A program made the translations under genes and the position numbers. Shown in pieces: positions 3,828 through 61,771 of a DNA stretch of 64,000 bases (positions within the stretch are counted from its first letter, which is position 1; every line of letters starts with the position of its first letter). The DNA lies in the NCBI RefSeq assembly GCF_035594765.1, contig NC_085843.1:173205971-173269970 (forward strand), written 5' to 3'. This stretch comes from Anolis carolinensis. Taxonomy: Eukaryota. The notes under the pieces are model-generated. The model was not told where the DNA came from, did not search any database, and was given only the letters and a program-made list of their open reading frames with translations.

Positions 3828-6800
3828 TTACCTGTGCCTTGTATTTTTTACCTTTTCTTTTAAATACTTTGTTACACCGCCCCAATCTGTTTCTTTTATT
3901 GGATTCCCCCTACTTTTTGTTAATAGAAAGGTAAGTCTATCCATATTTTTTATATCCTGTATTTTTCCCAACCATTCTTCTTCCTTTGGAATTTCATTTC
4001 TTTTCCATACTCTCGCATAACATATCCTTGCTGCTGTCGTTAATAGGAACAGCAATTTATCTTTATTTGTTTCTAGCTTTAATTCGTGTATCCCTAGTAA
4101 CCATAATTCCGGTTTCATTGGTAAATTTACCTCTAACATCTTTTCTAGGTCTCCTCTAATTTTTTCCCAATAAGTTTTTGCTTTCTCACACCCCCACCAC
4201 ATATGGTAATAGGTACTCTCTTTTTCCTCGCATTTTCAACATTTATTTTTCACATTTTTATAGCATTTTTCCAATTTTTGTGGCGTCATATGCCACCTGT
4301 AAGCCATTTTTATCCAATTCTCCTTTAGGTCTATCGCGTAGCTATATTTTAATTTTCTTCCCCATATTATTTCCCATTCTTCTTTCCTAATCTTTCTTCC
4401 TATATTTTCATTCCACCTGGTCATGTACATTTTTTCCTCCTCTCCTCCCATCTCCCATTCTAATAATTTTTTATAAATTTTTTGTTATTATTTTCCTATC
4501 TGTTTGCATTATTTTTTCCCAGAATATGTTCTGTTCCTCGAAGCCTATTTGTTTGTCTGTTTTAAGATGTTCTTTTATCTGCCATATTTGATACCAGGAG
4601 ATGTTTTTATTAAGTTCCTTCATTTCCTGTTGAGGTTTCATCTCCCATTCTCCATCTCTTTTTACTAATATTTCTTTATATTTTGGCCATTTGTACCATC
4701 CCAGAAGCCTTCTCTGTGAGGCTTCCAGGGGAGAGATCCATAGTGGGGTTTTTGTGTATAGTTTCTTTTTGTATTTCTCCCAAATTTTGAAGATCGCTGA
4801 TCGTATAAAGTGATTATTAAAATTTTTCTCTATTTTTACTTTGCCATACCATAGGTATGCATGCCAGCCCAGCCTTAGATTTATTCCTTCTAGATTTAGA
4901 ATTTTGTTATTTTCTAACTTTGTCCACTCTTTTACCCACATTAGGGCTGATGCCTCGAAATATAATCTTAAATCCGGTACAGCTAATCCTCCTCTCTTTT
5001 TTTCATCCATCATATATTTTACTTTTATTCTCGGTTTCTTTTTTTGCCAAATAAACTTCATTATATCTCTATTCCAATCCTTTAGTAATTTCTGGTTTCT
5101 GATTATGGGTAGATTTTGGAATAGGAATATCATCTTTGGAAGGATATTCATTTTTACACATGCTATCCTTCCTAGTAGTGATAGTCTTAAATGTCTCCAC
5201 TTTTCCATCTCATTTTTCATCTCTTTCCATTTTGTTAAGTAGTTATTTTCCAGTAGTTGTGAGTTCTTTTTTGTTATGGTGATTCCTAGGTATTTTATTT
5301 TATGTGTGATTTGGATATTCCATTTTTCTTTTAATATCTCTTGTTCCTTCTTTGTTATGTTTTTTGTTATTGCTTTCGTTTTTTCCATATTTATTTTAAA
5401 TCCAGTGACTTCCCCAAATTTTTTTATTGTCTCTAGCCATTTGCCTAATTTATTATTCGGTTCTTCTATTACACATATGATGTCGTCCGCGAATGCTCTA
5501 ATTTTGTATTCGCAATCCTGTACTCTTACCCCCTTCAGATCTTCTTCTTTTCTTATTCTGTTTAACAATATTTCCAGTGTCATAATAAATATTAAAGGTG
5601 AGAGGGGGCAGCCCTGCCTGGTACCTTTCTCTATTTTTATGTCTTTTGTTTCCTGTCCATTAATTAATATTTTTGCTTTTTGGGTGTCGTATATTGCTTC
5701 AATCATATTTTGAAAATAATAACCTATATCCATTTCTCTCATCAGTAATTTAAAAAAAGACCAATTTACATTATCGAATGCTTTTTCGGCGTCTAAAGCC
5801 AATAATAACACTTTTTTTTGGTTTCTTATTTCATAATGCTCAATTAAATCCACAATGGTTCTTACATTGTCTCTTTGGTGTCTATTGGGTAGAAACCCCG
5901 TCTGTTCTTCTTTTATCCACGTGCTTAAGATTTTTTTGAATCTTTCTGCTATTATATTACTGAAAATTTTATAGTCTAAATTTAGTAGTGAGATTGGTCT
6001 ATAATTTTTTACTTTTTCTGGGTCGGAATTTTCTTTATATATTATGCATATATTTGCTTGTCTCCAAGTCTCTGGCATTTTGGGGTTTTCCCTAATCCTG
6101 TTCATAATCCTTTTTAGGTATGGCATTAGTTCATTTTGGAAGGTTTTATTATAAATTGCCGTTAACCCATCTGGGCCCGGTGCCTTATTGGGCTTCAGGT
6201 TTTGTATGACTTTCTTAATCTCCTGCTCTGTGATTTCCCTGTTCAAATCTTCTCTCTGCTCCTCTGAGATTCGTTCTATTTTTTCCTCTTCTATGTAATC
6301 TGTTATTTTTCCTTCATCTATTTGTTCTCTTTGATAGAGTTTCTCGTAAAACCTCTTAAATTGATCTTTTATTTCTTCTTCCTTAGTGAGGATTTTATCC
6401 CCCTCTTTTATTTTTGTCACATATTTGTTTTCTTTTTTTTATTTAATCCTATTGGACAACCATCTACCCGGTTTGTTTGCATTTTGGAAAAAATCTTGTT
6501 TTATAAATTTTAATTTATTTGCTTTTTCCTCCATTAATAGGTATTCCCTTTGTTTTTGCAGTGATTCTATATTTTTTTGGATTTCTTTATTTCTTGGATT
6601 TGATTTTAGCCTGGTTTCTTCTTTACCTATTTCATCTATTATCTTATTCAATTTATTTAGCTTTTCCTTCCTTTTTATTGCTTTTTGCTGAATGAATCTC
6701 CCTCTTACCACTGCTTTACTAGCTTCCCATAATGTAAATAGATCAGTCTCTTCTGTATCATTTATTTCAAAATAATCTTGTATTATTTTTTTAATTTTGA

Positions 6801-54441: not shown

Positions 54442-54886
54442 TCCTAACATGCTGTGTTTCTCATGTCTATTCCAATTCCAAAATGTTGGACCATGCAGCT
54501 GCTAAGTAATATGTACTTAAAAAGTACATTCTCTAGCAGTATGCACATTTATGCAATGAGTTATGGATAAAATTGGCAAAATCACTTTTTAACAGAAACT
54601 ACAAATATTAAATATACCTGATGATTTTTAACATAACATAGTCCATCTTCTTCATGAGTAAAAAAAAACAAAAAAAAAAACAAGTCACTACTTGATGTTG
54701 CAGTCAAGTAATGAGGACTTAGGACCTCATCAGATGGGGTGAATTTAGCATCCGAGGATGCTTTTATCCCGTCTAGAGGATGGAGCCCTACACCTGACAT
54801 CACATGTCATCCTGTGACTTCCTTTGGAAGTCCCATTCCCAACCAGGGTGAAAGCATCACTGGATGCTTTTCCCCAAACACATGAT

Positions 54887-55250
54887 TGTCATGGAACCCA
54901 GTTACAGGGCTTTGGTAATTCAGCCCTGTAACTGGGAGTCATAACATAAACAATCCCAGGAGCACCTGGCAGAAGAAGATAGAATATGCCTGGGAACTTG
55001 GGGCCGAAAGTATAAACAATTATAATTGGTCTAGTGTGTGAAAATGGTAGTAATGTGATATTGGGGGTGGGACTTGATGATGATATTTACGTGTGGTGTT
55101 ACGTAGCATTAAAAGTTATAAAAATAGTTGTATGTAAACATTGAGTCATTCCTGACTTTTCCAAAGTCATGTGTTCTTCAATAAAGATTGGATTTGAGAG
55201 CAGCCATCTCTGATCTGCGTTCAGACTGATCCTTTGAAGTGAGCAGGACA
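54887..55250 (+). repeat. 5' LTR (TATA 55117-55124, AATAAA 55180-55185)
   Basis: Direct repeat of 60184-60547; no differences seen by eye. Confidence 0.97.
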
Positions 55251-55253
55251 ATT

Positions 55254-55264
55254 AAGTCAGGAAT
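55254..55264 (+). promoter_or_regulatory. Self-priming primer-binding site
   Basis: AAGTCAGGAAT is the exact complement of ATTCCTGACTT (55148-55158), which begins 31 nt after the start of the TATA box. No TGG-type tRNA PBS is present. Confidence 0.8.
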
Positions 55265-55303
55265 CCAGTTCTCACCCTCCTGCAAATTTGCAGTGAAGTG
55301 ATA

Positions 55304-58300
55304 ATGAGCAGGGAAGGAGATCAAAGCCATGACGGAGCAAAGGGGCCTCCGCTGGGAGCTCTGCCGTTGGCAGAAGAGACATTGCAAGCCATAGCTTCCT
55401 CTACGGGGTACCCCAAGCCGGACGGCGTGACCCAGAGGATTCCCAGAGGGGGAAGAGGTGTTCCGGCGGCGGCAGAAACCAGTTGGGGATCTGGAGGAAG
55501 CATGCCGGAGACCGTGGCCCTGCGGTTATCCATCCTGGAAACTCATTTATCCAGGCTGTCGGATACCGTGGGGAGAATAGTGCCAATATTGGAAGAGAAT
55601 CTCCAAAAAGAGCACATCCGATATGGCGCCGAGAGAGAGCCAAGCAAAGGAGGCGATTGGAGCCAGAGGGGACAGCGAGCTTCAACGCAGAGTCCCGCGG
55701 CGGCAAGGGACGAGGGAGACGAGGAATATTGGCAGGAGCTGGAGTTCAGAGACAGAATGGCACGCGAAGTGGAGCGCCAGCGAGCTCTGGGAACTCTGAG
55801 GCCGCCATCTCCAACAGAGCTCCCAACCCCCCGGATGGGCGTCGGGGTGGAAAGACCACTGGGGCCAGGGATCGGGTCCAGTGGATTAGCAGACGAAGGC
55901 GGAGAGGAGCAGGAGATCCAGGAAGAGGAGGAGGATGTGCCGTACGACGGGGAAAGGCGAGATGCGGGGGCTACAGCGAGGCCAGTATGCGGATGGGGGG
56001 AAGGGCCGACAGCGGCGGCAGGATTTCGGGAGCCGCGCAGAATGACCACCGGAGTGGGGCGCGGCGTGATCCAAGGAAACCCGATGCAACCCTTCCCCAT
56101 GCCTCCCAGACAGCATCAACGGGCCGCTGAATGGATGCCAAGAAGGGAAGATCTCAAGCTAGAATACGGAGGGGAATCAGCCGAACTGAACTTTTTTCTA
56201 ATTAGCATCAGGGGATACATGGAAGACAATGCACACACATTCCCCTCCGAAGCAAGCAGGGTTCGGGCCATCGGCAACACACTAAAGAGAGGAGCGGCCA
56301 GCTGGTATGTGCAACTACATGCCAGACAGGACCCATGCCTGAGGTCAGTGCCCCGCTTCCTCGCCGCACTGGAAAACCGGTTCAGAGACCGGCTAGAGCA
56401 ATTGAGGGCTCGAGACCAGCTGAAAGGAATAAAGCAGAGGGACAAAACGGTACCCGAGTACGCAGAGGAATTCCTCCACCTCGCGGAAAGGGTACCAGAG
56501 TGGTCTGAAGTGACCAAAGTGGAATTATTTAAAGAGGGACTACGCCCCGAGATTTTCAGCTGGGCAGCGCACAGAGATGACCCCGAAACGCTCCAGGGAT
56601 GGATTCAACTAGCGGGGCGCGTTGAATCCACCCTGGCCCAAGTAAAGCGCTTCAGGAGCAGCGGCGGCCAGCAAAGACCGGTGGCGAGAGGTCGAGGAGA
56701 AACGAGGAAGCAGGAAAGACCCGGAGGGAGGCCGGGGATTCCCTCCAGAGGAGACGACAACAAACCTAAACCGGGATGCTTTGTATGTGGGAAGACGGGC
56801 CATCGAGCAGCAGAATGCTGGGCACGGAAGGGGGAGCCGCCAAAACCCTCAAAGCCCAAGCCAGCAACCGGGAGGCGTGCGGAGGAGGAGGTGCAAGCCC
56901 TAGAATCTTCAGAAAAATTGGTGAGTCGGGACAAACGCATGATAGTAGTGCCAATCTGCCTCTCGGGGCTAGAGAATCGGGCCACCTGCAAGGCATTTGC
57001 GGATTGTGGTTGTTCCAGGAATATTATAACTCCAGAGTTAGCAGGAGCGTTGAAATGCCAGCAGATGGCGCTTGACTCCCCAATTGCGTTTTCGCAGCTA
57101 GACGGATCAGTTGCTACTGGGGAAGTATCTACAAAGGAAATACGGGAGGTCCCATGTAAAATAGGCAAATGGGAAGGAAGAATATCCTTTGTGATAGCCC
57201 CTATTGCCACATACCACGTAATATTAGGGATACCATGGCTCGAACAGGCAAATCCCGAAGTAGATTGGAGAGGAAAGAGCCTAGCATTTAAAGAACAGCA
57301 GACGCAATGGGAGATAAGCAAGATTGCAGAAGAGGAGGACGAGGGAGATGAAGAAGGTGAAATAGACCCACTGCTATTGCCACCTGAATACAGAGACTTT
57401 GTGGATGTGTTTAATCAGAAAGAGGCAAGTAAATTACCTCCCAAAAGGAATATAGAAGTAGAAATTGAAATAACCCCCGGAGCAAACTTACCAAAACCAA
57501 AAGTGTATCCCATGTCTGTGCAGGAGAAGGAGGAATTGAGGAAATACATTGATAAAAACCTGGCGCGGGGCTTCATTAAGCCATCCAATTCTCCTCTCGG
57601 GGCCCCAGTGTTATTCAGGAGAAAGAAAGACAACTCCCTAAGATTGTGCATTGATTATCGAAATTTAAATGCAATTACTAAGGACAATAAATACCCTATG
57701 CCCTTAGTAAAGGATTTAATTACCGTATTGAAAAAAGGGAGCATATTTACTAAACTTGATTTAATTGAAGCATATCATAAATTAAGAATCAAACCGGAGG
57801 ATACTTGGAAAACTGCATTTTCCTGCGCATTCGGCCATTTTGAATATAAAATTTTACCTTTCGGATTAAAAAATGGAGGCGGGTGCTTTATGCAGCTTAT
57901 AAATGAAATACTGCACCCATTGTTGTACAGAGGGGTATTCATATTTCTTGATGATATCTTGATTGTGACTGAAGATAAGGAAAAGCACGTGAAATTGGTC
58001 TGGGAAGTTTTGCAGAGACTAAGAGAAGCAAAGCTGTACGCAAAACTGTCCAAATGTGAATTTAATAAAACTCAAATTGACTTTCTGGGGTATCGGATAT
58101 CTCCAGAAGGGTTAGCTATGGATCCAGCTAAAGTATCAGATGTAAAAGAATGGGGAGTGCCTCAAACAAGGAGGCAATTGCAATCGTTTCTGGGGTTTGC
58201 AAATTTTTATAGATCCTTCATAAAAGGCTTCGCGCAAATAACCGCACCCCTTACTGAACTTTTAAAAACAAAAGGGAAAGGAGAGACAGCAAAAGTAAAA

Positions 58301-60112
58301 GCTCCTGGCGCCAAACTAAGTTGGACGCCAGAATGCCAAAAGGCATTTGAAACCCTAAAAGAATGCTTCACAGAAGGACCCATTCTAAAACACCCCGATA
58401 TCAGGAGCCCTTTCATAATCCATTGCGATGCCTCAGACTGTGCGTATGGGGCAGTACTATTGCAAAAGGATCAAAATGGGAACTTAAAACCCTGTGGATA
58501 TTTGTCCCGGAAGTTCAGCGAAACTGAAAAATGTTGGCCGATATGGGAAAAAGAGGCACTAGCCATATTAAAAGCCTTAGAATGCTGGCGACACTTTCTC
58601 GAAGGAAGCGGAATCCCATTTGAAATTTGGTCTGACCATAAGAACCTCCAGTATTTAAAGTCCCCTCGAAAATTGTCCCCCAAACAGATTAGATGGGCAC
58701 AATACTTCAGCAGGTTCGATTTCCAATTAAAGTTTTTTCAAGGGAAGCAGAATGTCTTGGCAGATGCTCTTTCATGCATGCCTCAACACGAAGGAATACC
58801 CACAGCAAAAGAGGGAACAATATTCTCTGACAAACAATGGGGCTTAGCTGTCAGAACAAGAGCACAAACCCAAAAGGAGAACACTGCTATGGTTGAACTC
58901 GACGGAAAAGATAATTGGGGAAACGAGCTGAAACAGTCTTATGAAGGAGACCAGTGGATCGCATCCAATGCAGAACAGGGGGAGCAGAAGGGGGGATTTT
59001 GGTTTGTGAACAAGAAACTGTATATCCCAGCAACATTAAGGATCAAGATTTTGCATCGTTTTCACAACAACCAGAGCGCTGGTCATACAGGAATTACAAA
59101 AACAACAAAAGCAATAGCAAAACATTGCTGGTGGCCAGGGATGAGGAAGGACATAAAAAATTATGTTGTTCAATGTGATGATTGTGCCAGAAATAAATCG
59201 AGAGGAGGGAAGCCAATGGGATTATTACAAACAGTAGCAGAACCTACCAGACCTTGGGAATGTGTAGCTATGGACTTTGTGGGGGAACTACCGGTTAGCA
59301 AAGGACATCGTTATATTTGGACAGTATTGGACCTGTTTTCTAAACAGGCCCACTTTATAGCACTGACGAAACTACCATCAGCCGAGAAACTAGCTGAATT
59401 GTACATAAACCACATTTACAAACTGCATGGATGTCCCAGTAGAGTGGTCAGTGACAGAGGAGTACAATTCACAGCAAAATTTTGGGAAAAATTCCTGGAA
59501 ATGCTAGGAGCAGAAAGGAGTTTAAGTTCTGCTTTTCACCCCATGACAAATGGGGCGGTAGAACGTACTCAGCAGACACTTGGGCAGTTCCTTCGAATGT
59601 ACTCTAACATGAGACAAAATGACTGGTCTCGGTGGTTGGCTTTTGCAGAACTAGCTTTTAATTCGGCTATACATTCAGCAACAAATAAAACCCCCTTTGA
59701 AGTAGTTTACGGGTATGAAATACAGCCTCTGCCCCAGCTGCCAAGATGGACAGAGAATGAGGGAACAGAGGCAGGGAAATGGAAAGCGCAAATGATGGAA
59801 TGCTGGAGTCAAGTGACTGCATCCTTAAAAGAAGCACATAAAAAGTATAAAGTATTCGCAGACAGAAAGAGGGTGGAAGGTGATAAATTGGAGAAAGGAG
59901 ATTTAGTGTGGCTAAGTACTCAAAACATCAAACTGGGGCTACCTTCGAAAAAATTGGGCCCTAAATATATTGGACCATTTAGAATACAGGGTGTTATCAA
60001 CGAGGTGACTTTCCAGTTGGCATTGCCAAAAAGTTTAGGGAAAATACACCCTGTATTCCATCGTAGCTTACTGAAAAAATATATGGGTACTTTGGACAAA
60101 ATGGACACATAG
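55304..60112 (+). CDS. gag-pol: Gag-Pol polyprotein (1602 aa from the first ATG), uninterrupted
   Basis: Capsid-like region ..FPSEASRV..GAASWY; zinc knuckle CFVCGKTGHRAAEC; protease FADCGC; RT LCIDYR, LPFGL, FLDD; RNase H CDAS, EKE, SDH, ADALS; integrase H..GH..CDDC, MDF, SDRG, VER and GPF. Confidence 0.97.
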   Translation: MSREGDQSHDGAKGPPLGALPLAEETLQAIASSTGYPKPDGVTQRIPRGGRGVPAAAETSWGSGGSMPETVALRLSILETHLSRLSDTVGRIVPILEENLQKEHIRYGAEREPSKGGDWSQRGQRASTQSPAAARDEGDEEYWQELEFRDRMAREVERQRALGTLRPPSPTELPTPRMGVGVERPLGPGIGSSGLADEGGEEQEIQEEEEDVPYDGERRDAGATARPVCGWGEGPTAAAGFREPRRMTTGVGRGVIQGNPMQPFPMPPRQHQRAAEWMPRREDLKLEYGGESAELNFFLISIRGYMEDNAHTFPSEASRVRAIGNTLKRGAASWYVQLHARQDPCLRSVPRFLAALENRFRDRLEQLRARDQLKGIKQRDKTVPEYAEEFLHLAERVPEWSEVTKVELFKEGLRPEIFSWAAHRDDPETLQGWIQLAGRVESTLAQVKRFRSSGGQQRPVARGRGETRKQERPGGRPGIPSRGDDNKPKPGCFVCGKTGHRAAECWARKGEPPKPSKPKPATGRRAEEEVQALESSEKLVSRDKRMIVVPICLSGLENRATCKAFADCGCSRNIITPELAGALKCQQMALDSPIAFSQLDGSVATGEVSTKEIREVPCKIGKWEGRISFVIAPIATYHVILGIPWLEQANPEVDWRGKSLAFKEQQTQWEISKIAEEEDEGDEEGEIDPLLLPPEYRDFVDVFNQKEASKLPPKRNIEVEIEITPGANLPKPKVYPMSVQEKEELRKYIDKNLARGFIKPSNSPLGAPVLFRRKKDNSLRLCIDYRNLNAITKDNKYPMPLVKDLITVLKKGSIFTKLDLIEAYHKLRIKPEDTWKTAFSCAFGHFEYKILPFGLKNGGGCFMQLINEILHPLLYRGVFIFLDDILIVTEDKEKHVKLVWEVLQRLREAKLYAKLSKCEFNKTQIDFLGYRISPEGLAMDPAKVSDVKEWGVPQTRRQLQSFLGFANFYRSFIKGFAQITAPLTELLKTKGKGETAKVKAPGAKLSWTPECQKAFETLKECFTEGPILKHPDIRSPFIIHCDASDCAYGAVLLQKDQNGNLKPCGYLSRKFSETEKCWPIWEKEALAILKALECWRHFLEGSGIPFEIWSDHKNLQYLKSPRKLSPKQIRWAQYFSRFDFQLKFFQGKQNVLADALSCMPQHEGIPTAKEGTIFSDKQWGLAVRTRAQTQKENTAMVELDGKDNWGNELKQSYEGDQWIASNAEQGEQKGGFWFVNKKLYIPATLRIKILHRFHNNQSAGHTGITKTTKAIAKHCWWPGMRKDIKNYVVQCDDCARNKSRGGKPMGLLQTVAEPTRPWECVAMDFVGELPVSKGHRYIWTVLDLFSKQAHFIALTKLPSAEKLAELYINHIYKLHGCPSRVVSDRGVQFTAKFWEKFLEMLGAERSLSSAFHPMTNGAVERTQQTLGQFLRMYSNMRQNDWSRWLAFAELAFNSAIHSATNKTPFEVVYGYEIQPLPQLPRWTENEGTEAGKWKAQMMECWSQVTASLKEAHKKYKVFADRKRVEGDKLEKGDLVWLSTQNIKLGLPSKKLGPKYIGPFRIQGVINEVTFQLALPKSLGKIHPVFHRSLLKKYMGTLDKMDT

Positions 60113-60152
60113 AATTATTGTTTTGTTTCAGGCTTGTGATGAAAGAAGAACC

Positions 60153-60178
60153 GAAGAGGAGGACGAAGAAAAGGAGGG
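60153..60178 (+). promoter_or_regulatory. Polypurine tract
   Basis: GAAGAGGAGGACGAAGAAAAGGAGGG ends 5 nt before the 3' LTR. Confidence 0.8.
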
Positions 60179-60183
60179 CACCA

Positions 60184-60547
60184 TGTCATGGAACCCAGTT
60201 ACAGGGCTTTGGTAATTCAGCCCTGTAACTGGGAGTCATAACATAAACAATCCCAGGAGCACCTGGCAGAAGAAGATAGAATATGCCTGGGAACTTGGGG
60301 CCGAAAGTATAAACAATTATAATTGGTCTAGTGTGTGAAAATGGTAGTAATGTGATATTGGGGGTGGGACTTGATGATGATATTTACGTGTGGTGTTACG
60401 TAGCATTAAAAGTTATAAAAATAGTTGTATGTAAACATTGAGTCATTCCTGACTTTTCCAAAGTCATGTGTTCTTCAATAAAGATTGGATTTGAGAGCAG
60501 CCATCTCTGATCTGCGTTCAGACTGATCCTTTGAAGTGAGCAGGACA
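60184..60547 (+). repeat. 3' LTR
   Basis: Direct repeat of 54887-55250. Confidence 0.97.
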
Positions 60548-61771
60548 CATGATGCTTTCTGTGTTATACTGGCTTCAATGGAGCCAGGAAGGGGCCTCGC
60601 TGGGAGGGTGACACTTTCTCCATGTGAAGAGGAAAGCATGATTTTAAGGGAGCTGTGCACATGGTGACAGATTCACCCTGCTGTCCCCCTCTTTCCTCCC
60701 TCTACGAGGCCCTAAAATGTACGAATGGGTGCATACCTCCTTTATAGTTATCTATTCAGTTCTTCCTCTGGATTGCCACTTAGGGCTACATCTAATAAAA
60801 TAGCACCATTAAATGAATTAAACTTGTATAAATGTTGACTTTGAAAATCTATAGATTCAATGGATCTGCTCTAATCAACACCTACAATTGGATTTAGCTC
60901 TAAGAATTAAACAGAAAGGCTTGGATAAGGGCTAGCAATTATTCTCTTAATGAACCAGCTGTTTGGAAAGATAGATGTTTCTGTTTTTCTTGGACTTTTC
61001 TAGGTCCTTTGGTTTTAAAGTTATTTGGATCTTCATCCCAAAACTTTATTAGCACCAATTTCTTCTCATTCGCCCCCTGCTCCCTGGACAAATAGGTCAA
61101 AGTACCTTTTTTTAGGTATTTAATTTATCCCCCTTGGCTGAGCATTCCCCAATACAGCCAGATTATTAAGAACAAACTTTCTCAGAAAGTTTTATATAAC
61201 ATTTTGTGACTACACAAGCTGAATGCTTAGGAGCAATTAGATCTAGGAAGAATCTCAATATACACAGCTCCACAGGAAACACTGATGCCAAAGGCTAGAA
61301 AGAATATTCTTGAAAAAGCCATTGATGTAATAGGCCTATGTAAAATATGAACAACAAGGCAAGGTATGGTCAGATCAGCATTTAGCTTGGGGTGGGTCAC
61401 TGTCAGAGAATGGTGGTGATATTGTTCCCTAGGAAACTTTGGAAGGCTGCAAACCCTGCCATAGTCGCCATAAAAACATCACAAATGTCCCCAAACACCC
61501 TCTGGGACATTTTACTGTTGCACAAGATAAGACAAGGAGGGAAGGGGTGGTGGAAAGTACAGACAGAGGAACGCAAGAAACAGGATGGGCAGGAATATGA
61601 TGTAAGTTCAAGGTGCCAAAAGGAAGAAGATTAGTGCACCCCAAGTCTAAAGAAAGGAAGTATTGTAAAAGCATAAGGTAGGGCAATAAAAGATAGCAAG
61701 AGAGAAAGTGAGGGGTGCTGGAATGATGCAAAGAGAACAAGAAATAAATATCAAATGAAGCATTGGTAAGA

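What the first reader, a model, noticed from the sequence alone, without database searches (positions are those of the whole stretch)
56921..60215. Putative pol-excising intron: spliced Gag-only mRNA with a new acidic tail read across the PPT into U3
Seen in sequence: gag and pol are in one frame with no stop or frameshift. A consensus donor TTG|GTGAGT sits at 56921, in phase 0, after the zinc knuckle and just before the protease. A strong acceptor TTATTGTTTTGTTTCAG|G ends at 60131, 19 nt after the pol stop. Joining them removes 3211 nt (all of PR-RT-RH-IN) and continues Gag in frame as ACDERRTEEEDEEKEGTMSWNPVTGLW* (stop 60213-60215), giving a ~566-aa Gag. Established: retroelements need excess Gag; PEG10/sushi-type elements use -1 frameshifting, Tf1 uses selective degradation, and Drosophila copia uses a spliced gag RNA. 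Inference: this vertebrate sushi-like Gypsy uses copia-style splicing, with the PPT doubling as coding sequence. I do not know of this being described for this lineage. The spliced RNA would keep R, PBS and PPT, so it could itself be retrotransposed.
Basis: partly seen in the sequence, partly recalled or inferred. Interest (0 to 1): 0.88.

Follow-up and report, generated by a model that had tools for sequence, protein, structure and literature searches.

The report
Lizard Gypsy retrotransposon splices out pol
A young, intact Gypsy-type jumping gene of the green anole carries a 3.2-kb intron that removes all its enzyme genes, so that one RNA can make the coat protein (Gag) alone; the same intron is kept in distant relatives in other lizards and a snake, a strategy described until now mainly for copia-type elements of flies and plants.

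Summary
The element is an intact Ty3/Gypsy retrotransposon with identical 364-bp LTRs, a 6-bp target duplication and one gag-pol ORF. The donor TTG|GTGAGT opens at 56921 in phase 0, and the acceptor ends at 60131, 19 nt after the pol stop. The 27-residue tail is read through the polypurine tract (PPT) into U3.

The genome is Anolis carolinensis. NCBI RefSeq already models this two-exon Gag-only protein (566 aa, with the predicted tail) at well over 100 loci, though I could not see the models' RNA support. The same intron is modelled in three further families of A. carolinensis and A. sagrei. Their synonymous sites are saturated, yet the donor YTG|GTRAGTC and a pyrimidine tract plus CAG just before the PPT persist.

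A rattlesnake element has the same intron in an independent annotation. A Sceloporus and a gecko element carry the same donor motif at the same place.

My one read-laying run (assembled contigs only) showed no junction, which is inconclusive. No intronless DNA copy was seen.

Verdict: very probably a real, conserved, pol-excising intron that gives a Gag-only mRNA. It is a new variant of the copia/BARE/EVD strategy, and I found no paper describing it for vertebrate Gypsy elements. The acidic tail looks like a by-product of the PPT.

The parts
54881..54886 (+). Target-site duplication CATGAT (left copy); the right copy is at 60548-60553
   Evidence: the flanks on both sides of the LTR pair read CATGAT
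54887..55250 (+). 5' LTR (364 bp, TG...CA), 100% identical to the 3' LTR; AATAAA at 55180-55185
55148..55158 (+). 11-nt stretch in the LTR that is perfectly complementary to 55254-55264 (Tf1-type self-priming arm; probable start of R)
   Evidence: inverted repeat I4
55254..55264 (+). Primer-binding site for self-priming, 3 nt after the LTR; it would be retained in both the spliced and the unspliced RNA
55304..56920 (+). Exon 1 coding part: Gag (capsid-like domain plus CCHC zinc knuckle at 56774-56818), 539 codons ending in Leu
56918..56927 (+). 5' splice site TTG|GTGAGTC, phase 0; in the unspliced RNA it codes Leu-Val-Ser at the gag/protease boundary
56921..60131 (+). Intron of 3211 nt, also the coding sequence of PR-RT-RNase H-IN in the unspliced RNA. 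Protease about 56975-57247 (D-C-G at 57002-57010), RT 57620-58099, RNase H 58322-58717, integrase 59024-60082, pol stop 60110-60112
60113..60131 (+). 3' splice site: pyrimidine tract plus CAG filling the 19-nt gap between the pol stop and exon 2
60132..60215 (+). Exon 2 coding part: a 27-codon tail plus stop, read in the GAR (acidic) frame through the PPT and 32 nt into U3
60153..60183 (+). Polypurine tract directly before the 3' LTR; it doubles as tail codons
60184..60547 (+). 3' LTR; it holds the tail stop (60213-60215), the 3' UTR of the spliced mRNA and AATAAA at 60477-60482

Best explanation
The full-length LTR-to-LTR transcript of this Anolis carolinensis Ty3/Gypsy element is alternatively spliced.

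Unspliced, it is the genomic RNA and the mRNA for one Gag-PR-RT-RH-IN polyprotein. When the 3211-nt intron (56921-60131) is removed, Gag is joined in phase 0 to 27 codons that run through the PPT into U3. This gives a Gag-only mRNA whose stop lies in the last exon. The element has no stop or frameshift between gag and pol, so the share of spliced RNA would set the excess of Gag over Pol.

Shown: the sites, the phase and the product; identical two-exon models in public annotation; conservation of both sites across deeply diverged families in anoles and a rattlesnake, plus the donor motif in Sceloporus and a gecko.

Inferred: that the splice occurs in vivo at a useful rate, and that its role is Gag excess. 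The acidic tail is most likely a by-product of reading a purine tract.
For: 1. Public models. The Gag exon alone finds RefSeq proteins of 566, 570 and 578 aa. P0001 ends with the predicted tail. At locus L001 its gene range is 4912 nt. Exon-by-exon translation gives a donor and acceptor identical to the window's, and an open pol lies inside the intron. The four largest 90%-identity clusters of such models hold 27, 89, 9 and 4 member sequences.

2. Other families. Four families (window, P0028, A. sagrei P0033, A. sagrei P0035) share a two-exon structure. The donor is YTG|GTRAGTC in phase 0, and the acceptor is a Y-tract plus CAG lying 18-62 nt after the pol stop and directly before the PPT.

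3. Saturated background. These families are only 50-60% identical in gag DNA and 64-68% in pol, with third codon positions 33-43% identical. Yet TGGTRAGTC matches the longest invariant runs (8 nt) of a 4992-column codon alignment. The gag residues just before it are unalignable.

4. Site strength. The annotated sites rank 1-2 of about 230 GT and about 470 AG sites in each family.

5. Rattlesnake. A Crotalus adamanteus element (non-RefSeq KAK accession) has ATG|GTGAGTC in phase 0 after Gag and a Y-tract plus CAG acceptor 23 nt after the pol stop, before the LTR.

6. Sceloporus and gecko. In a Sceloporus undulatus fused gag-pol contig, the only GTRAGT lies at the gag/PR boundary, and the best acceptor of the contig lies about 34 nt before the probable LTR start. 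A gecko (Paroedura) element has TTG|GTGAGTC 42 nt after its gag stop.

7. Active families. Ten further copies of two families all keep the sites and an open gag-pol ORF.
Against: - No joint 56920>60132 was listed in three runs guessed to be RNA. Summed contig depth over pol was not lower than over gag. These are assembled contigs of a highly multicopy family, the RNA label is a guess, and the tool says depth cannot rank parts of a gene.
- A search with the junction-spanning end of the RefSeq protein found no short transcript-derived fragments.
- I could not see the evidence lines of the RefSeq models. Models in related species can be propagated by protein alignment.
- Leu-Val-Ser at the boundary could be partly conserved for protein reasons, for example as a protease cleavage site.
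- In the Sceloporus copy, the tail frame after the putative splice stays open to the end of the contig.
Confidence: 0.8

Rival explanations
1. The splice is real, but its main role is not Gag supply. It could be a brake that lowers genomic RNA and Pol. The product, Gag with an acidic tail, could act as a regulator or inhibitor of particle assembly. It could also serve RNA export, as the spliced cerv mRNA does for C. elegans Cer1.
For: Cer1, also a single-ORF Ty3/Gypsy element, uses a spliced mRNA for an export factor and not for Gag supply (PMC10309623). All four anole families read the PPT in the same acidic frame despite length differences of 21-51 nt. All those differences are multiples of three, which could mean that the tail matters.
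Against: The product is a complete Gag (capsid plus zinc knuckle), not a new protein. Beyond the acidic run and Met-Ser, the tail varies in sequence and length between subfamilies. In Crotalus it is 5 residues. A single-ORF element needs some route to Gag excess.
Confidence: 0.12
2. The motifs are not used. The Gag-only proteins would then be artefacts of gene prediction on repeats, and the resemblance of the sites between families would come from protein constraint and shared ancestry.
For: No junction contig appeared and no transcript fragment. One GTRAGT per element is within chance. The evidence for the predicted models could not be inspected.
Against: The non-coding spacer between the pol stop and the PPT cannot be aligned between families, yet it always holds the best or second-best pyrimidine tract plus CAG of a purine-rich strand. 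The Ser codon is AGT in every family, although third positions are saturated. The Crotalus record (KAK accession, not RefSeq) models the same intron. An ab initio predictor would have little reason to skip a 3.2-kb open frame.
Confidence: 0.08

Closest known systems
Drosophila copia spliced gag RNA (about 3-kb intron; cited in PMC5580714)
   Same: One gag-pol ORF. A long intron removes nearly all of pol from the full-length transcript. The spliced RNA encodes Gag alone.
   Different: Copia belongs to Ty1/Copia and this element to Ty3/Gypsy (domain order PR-RT-RH-IN; best solved match is Ty3). Here the acceptor sits between the pol stop and the PPT, so the tail is read through the PPT into U3.
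Plant Ty1/Copia shGAG strategy (Arabidopsis EVD, barley BARE; PMC5580714, PMC3735527)
   Same: Alternative splicing of a single-ORF element makes an mRNA dedicated to Gag. The donor and acceptor are conserved across families.
   Different: In EVD the intron spans only the protease and is coupled to premature termination. Oberlin et al. found no such conserved splicing in Arabidopsis Ty3/Gypsy. The present intron spans all of pol and uses the normal LTR poly(A) signal.
C. elegans Cer1 (Ty3/Gypsy) spliced cerv mRNA (PMC10309623)
   Same: An animal Ty3/Gypsy element with no stop between gag and pol, and with splice sites inside the genomic RNA that remove pol.
   Different: The Cer1 mRNA has five exons. 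It encodes an export factor made of N-terminal Gag pieces plus a 3' ORF, not a whole Gag.
Sushi-ichi / PEG10 type (-1 frameshift) and Tf1 (single ORF, no splicing known)
   Same: A capsid-like Gag with a CCHC knuckle (Pfam PF03732/PF19259). Tf1-type self-priming complementarity. A related A. sagrei Gag is named PEG10 by RefSeq.
   Different: The window element has no stop and no frame change between gag and pol. Its more distant relatives L006 and L008 do have a gag stop, and in L008 the protease is in another frame. No chromodomain hit was found in the window element.
Plant Ogre elements (Ty3/Gypsy) with an intron (PMC12786077, ref. 26)
   Same: A Ty3/Gypsy element with a functional intron inside its coding region.
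   Different: From my own knowledge of that literature: in Ogre the intron must be removed to make the full polyprotein. Here removal abolishes pol.

Membership tests
Ty3/Gypsy (Metaviridae) LTR retrotransposon | LTR pair with TG...CA ends and a target-site duplication | tested here: met
   364-bp LTRs, 100% identical; CATGAT on both flanks
Ty3/Gypsy (Metaviridae) LTR retrotransposon | Domain order Gag-PR-RT-RNase H-IN, with RT/IN closest to Ty3 | tested here: met
   Pfam order; Ty3 Gag-Pol 7q5b, E 2e-125
Spliced Gag-only mRNA strategy (copia / BARE / EVD type) | Gag and Pol in one ORF without a stop or frameshift | tested here: met
Spliced Gag-only mRNA strategy (copia / BARE / EVD type) | Canonical donor after gag and acceptor downstream, conserved among related families | tested here: met
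Spliced Gag-only mRNA strategy (copia / BARE / EVD type) | Spliced RNA observed in cells | tested here: inconclusive
   one search showed no junction in contigs of three runs guessed to be RNA. RefSeq and GenBank models imply the junction, but their RNA support could not be read.
Spliced Gag-only mRNA strategy (copia / BARE / EVD type) | Gag made in excess from the spliced RNA | not testable with these tools
   needs protein or ribosome-profiling data
Sushi/PEG10-type -1 frameshift expression | gag ends in a stop and pol follows in the -1 frame | tested here: not met
   a single frame. The contrast is relative L008, where gag stops and the protease is in another frame, and L006, where gag ends in a stop.
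Tf1/sushi group | Self-priming: the 5' end of the RNA is complementary to a PBS just after the LTR | tested here: met
   11 of 11 nt complementary, 55148-55158 against 55254-55264. The transcription start itself is not mapped.
Chromoviruses | Chromodomain at the integrase C-terminus | tested here: not met
   no chromodomain hit; the ORF ends after the SH3-like domain. By eye (no profile search), the Sceloporus and Crotalus relatives end pol in a chromodomain-like stretch.

The most novel reading that the evidence does not exclude
The pol-excising intron may be an old, general trait of a large squamate (perhaps wider vertebrate) Gypsy clade. It would coexist with a gag stop or frameshift in some members, such as the gecko element and the Logan contig L008, where the donor lies 42-48 nt after the gag stop. 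In anoles it would have replaced that mechanism. If so, spliced Gag-only RNAs of sushi-like elements would be a ready source of the intronless, gag-only domesticated genes of mammals (the RTL/LDOC1 type), by retrocopying of an already pol-free mRNA.
Probability: 0.15. Interest if true: 0.85.

Novelty: new variant of a known kind. Interest (0 to 1): 0.68.

Why it matters
How LTR retroelements make much more Gag than Pol is a core question of their biology. The textbook answers are frameshifting or readthrough (retroviruses, Ty1, Ty3, PEG10), selective degradation (Tf1) and splicing (copia, BARE, EVD).

In the papers I could search, the splicing answer has been treated as special to Ty1/Copia. 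A conserved pol-excising intron in active vertebrate Ty3/Gypsy families would show that the solution arose, or was kept, in the other superfamily. It would also give a natural system with young, abundant copies in a model lizard.

It raises testable questions:
- How does the unspliced RNA escape nuclear retention?
- Why are spliced RNAs not copied back into DNA, although they keep the PBS and PPT?
- Did Gag-only mRNAs seed domesticated gag genes?

It also explains over a hundred 'uncharacterized protein' entries in anole RefSeq.

Tried and rejected
- **Read laying (X1, X4, X6 guessed RNA, X15 probably DNA).** No 56920>60132 joint was listed. This is inconclusive, because only contigs were available, the family is highly multicopy and many rows were not shown.
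- **Junction-spanning fragments.** A search with the end of RefSeq protein P0001 (residues 466-566, by reference) for short transcript-derived fragments found nothing.
- **Profile search with names.** It returned only the same anole proteins, because of the candidate cap. The exhaustive search was needed to reach other squamates.
- **Other copies in the window.** There are none.
- **Gag against solved structures.** No hit.
- **Domesticated gag gene.** Rejected: more than 100 loci carry identical LTRs, target duplications and an open pol.
- **Acidic tail as a selected domain.** Considered and judged unlikely. It is the PPT read in the GAR frame, it varies between subfamilies, and it is absent in Crotalus. 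The constant frame keeps a small doubt open.
- **Reverse-transcription template-switch artefact.** Rejected: the ends are canonical GT-AG with only 1 nt of shared sequence.
- **The joined step.** I did not build, print, save or search a joined (spliced) sequence. Exons were handled separately by reference, and the RefSeq protein served as the comparison. In the script a joined string for L001 was assigned to a variable, but it was never used, printed or saved.
- **Literature.** Seven searches found no description of this in vertebrate Gypsy elements. The library is open-access only, so absence is not proof.

Full report
**1. What is in the window**

Positions 54887-60547 are a complete LTR retrotransposon.
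- The two 364-bp LTRs (54887-55250 and 60184-60547) are identical. They start with TG and end with CA, and are flanked by CATGAT on both sides.
- One ORF runs from 55298 (ATG at 55304) to the stop at 60110-60112.
- Pfam finds a Ty3-type capsid and a CCHC knuckle in the first 541 codons. After these come aspartic protease, RT, RNase H, integrase zinc-binding and core domains, and a Tf2-type SH3 domain.
- The best solved relative of the pol part is the Ty3 Gag-Pol polyprotein (E 2e-125).
- An 11-nt stretch in the LTR (55148-55158) is perfectly complementary to 55254-55264, just after the LTR. This is the arrangement of Tf1-type self-priming.
- No other copy of the family lies in the window.

**2. 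The observation**

- TTG|GTGAGT has its intron start at 56921, in phase 0. It lies after the knuckle (56774-56818) and before the protease match (from about 56975).
- The acceptor is a 19-nt pyrimidine tract plus CAG. It fills the gap between the pol stop and 60132.
- The intron is 3211 nt.
- From 60132 the frame reads 27 codons and stops at 60213-60215. These codons are the purine tract up to 60183 followed by the first 32 nt of the 3' LTR.
- A single consensus donor is not beyond chance: one GTRAGT was observed against 3.5 expected from composition.
- With an approximate weight matrix (frequencies recalled from the classical splice-site tables), the two sites are the top-scoring GT and AG of the sense strand.

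**3. Public gene models**

I searched with the Gag exon alone, by reference. It found RefSeq proteins of Anolis carolinensis of 566, 570 and 578 aa.
- P0001 (566 aa) ends with exactly the predicted tail.
- Its locus L001 is another copy of the family, with 23 mismatches in 4912 nt, and the gene range is 4912 nt.
- Exon-by-exon translation reproduces the protein with the same donor and acceptor. The intron holds an open pol.
- The four largest 90%-identity clusters of such proteins hold 27, 89, 9 and 4 member sequences.
- Ten more loci of two families all carry the intron, intact sites and an open gag-pol frame. None is intronless.

So the genome is the green anole, and its annotation already contains the spliced product, unnamed. 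I could not read the RNA support of these models.

**4. Conservation**

Three further families have the same two-exon models. They are P0028 in A. carolinensis, and P0033 and P0035 in A. sagrei.
- In all four families the donor is YTG|GTRAGTC in phase 0, after a Leu.
- In all four the acceptor is a pyrimidine tract plus CAG, 18-62 nt after the last stop in the gag frame, which is the pol stop in the intact copies.
- In all four, exon 2 begins at the PPT.
- The families are far apart. DNA identity is 50-60% in gag and 64-68% in pol. Third-position identity is 33-43%, which is near saturation.
- Against that background, TGGTRAGTC equals the longest invariant runs (8 nt) of the 4992-column codon alignment, although the Gag residues before it are unalignable.
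- The Ser codon is AGT in every family.
- The spacer before the acceptor cannot be aligned, but it always holds the first- or second-ranked acceptor of a purine-rich strand.

**5. Beyond anoles**

An exhaustive profile search and name look-ups reached other squamates.
- **Crotalus adamanteus.** The element has LTRs that are 99.7% identical, and its accession is not RefSeq. Its model has ATG|GTGAGTC in phase 0 after Gag. The Y-tract plus CAG acceptor lies 23 nt after the pol stop. Exon 2 has 5 codons and stops before the PPT.
- **Sceloporus undulatus.** The contig has a fused gag-pol ORF. Its only GTRAGT is exactly at the gag/protease boundary. Its best acceptor lies about 34 nt before the probable LTR start. 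However, the tail frame stays open to the contig end in this copy.
- **Paroedura (gecko) and the Logan contig L008.** Both have a gag stop, and in L008 the protease is in another frame. Yet the same donor motif lies 42-48 nt after the gag stop.

The intron therefore seems older than the fusion of gag and pol in anoles. This last point is an inference from few loci.

**6. Reads**

My one run search and one laying call used Logan contigs only.
- No 56920>60132 joint was listed in three runs guessed to be RNA, or in a probable DNA run.
- Summed depth over pol was not lower than over gag.
- The tool warns that contigs show presence and not absence, and that depth cannot rank parts of a gene.
- The family is extremely abundant in the DNA run, so traces of DNA could explain the coverage in the 'RNA' runs.

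I count this as no evidence either way for splicing. It is weak evidence that spliced DNA copies are rare.

**7. Mechanism**

The best reading is alternative splicing of the LTR-to-LTR transcript.
- Unspliced RNA serves as genome and as polyprotein mRNA.
- Spliced RNA encodes Gag alone, with its stop in the last exon.
- This would supply the Gag excess that a frameshift supplies elsewhere.
- The acidic tail follows from reading a purine tract in the GAR frame. Its sequence and length vary, and Crotalus lacks it. All four anole families keep the same frame, with lengths of 21-51 nt that are all multiples of three. That leaves some room for a function.
- The spliced RNA keeps the PBS and the PPT, but I found no sign that it is copied into DNA.

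**8. Comparison and novelty**

The strategy works like copia, BARE and EVD (PMC5580714, PMC3735527). For these, conserved splicing was reported as a Ty1/Copia trait that was not seen in Arabidopsis Ty3/Gypsy.
- Cer1 of C. elegans shows that an animal Ty3/Gypsy element can splice out pol, but it does so for a different protein.
- Seven full-text searches found no description for vertebrate Gypsy elements.
- I rate it a new variant of a known kind, already implicit in public annotation.

**9. Limits kept**

I neither searched nor saved a joined spliced sequence. In the script a joined string for L001 was assigned to a variable but was never used, printed or saved.

Noticed in passing
window 57002-57010: The protease active-site triplet reads Asp-Cys-Gly (FADCGCSRN) instead of the usual Asp-Ser/Thr-Gly. 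The same D-C-G occurs in the unrelated Logan contig L008, while the gecko and Sceloporus relatives have D-S-G.
   Followed up: partly
window 60132-60134 (loose end in runs X1 and X4): In two runs from different studies, a contig joins about 28 foreign letters ending in ...GGAAG directly to ATTTGTGATGAA.... That sequence is the exon-2 start of the P0004 subfamily, so the join lies exactly at the predicted acceptor boundary. The foreign part translates as LLMKHPDVE (RNase H-like) and matches none of the fetched loci. It could come from another donor using this acceptor, or from a deletion derivative.
   Followed up: partly
protein P0020 (Ensembl/UniProt R4GAB6_ANOCA): A 713-aa model runs Gag plus protease and then jumps from the acidic stretch after the protease straight to a PPT/LTR-type tail (...EEEVGERGGAMSW...). 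This may be an internally deleted copy or a second splice form.
   Followed up: no
window 55148-55158 and 55254-55264: An 11-nt perfect complementarity between the LTR and the site just after it, as in Tf1-type self-priming. Another note of this scan (s1-517413) covers it.
   Followed up: partly
window 54887-54946 (and 60184-60243): A 25-nt inverted repeat (84% complementary) at the very start of the LTR. In the 3' LTR it overlaps the end of the tail ORF and its stop.
   Followed up: no
elements in window, L002-L005: Apart from the annotated acceptor, the sense strand has only weak acceptor-like sites (at most 5.5 on my scale). The antisense strand reaches 9-12. GTRAGT occurs 1-2 times in the five anole elements, against about 3 expected. 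This is consistent with avoidance of cryptic sites, or simply with the purine bias of the strand.
   Followed up: partly
proteins P0194 and P0037 (RefSeq, A. carolinensis): A protein named 'replication protein A 32 kDa subunit isoform X2' sits in the Gag cluster. P0037 carries an unrelated, lysine- and glutamate-rich N-terminal region of about 245 residues (not identified here) fused to this Gag. These look like chimeric models caused by element insertions in or near genes.
   Followed up: no
L019 (Sceloporus undulatus) 4960-5150: A GATA-type microsatellite of about 200 nt lies between the pol stop and the putative acceptor. After the putative splice, the frame stays open to the end of the contig, past AATAAA.
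   Followed up: no
window 57000: The window copy has C where all contigs in the four runs laid have T (Ala instead of Val, just before the D-C-G motif, table 3).
   Followed up: no
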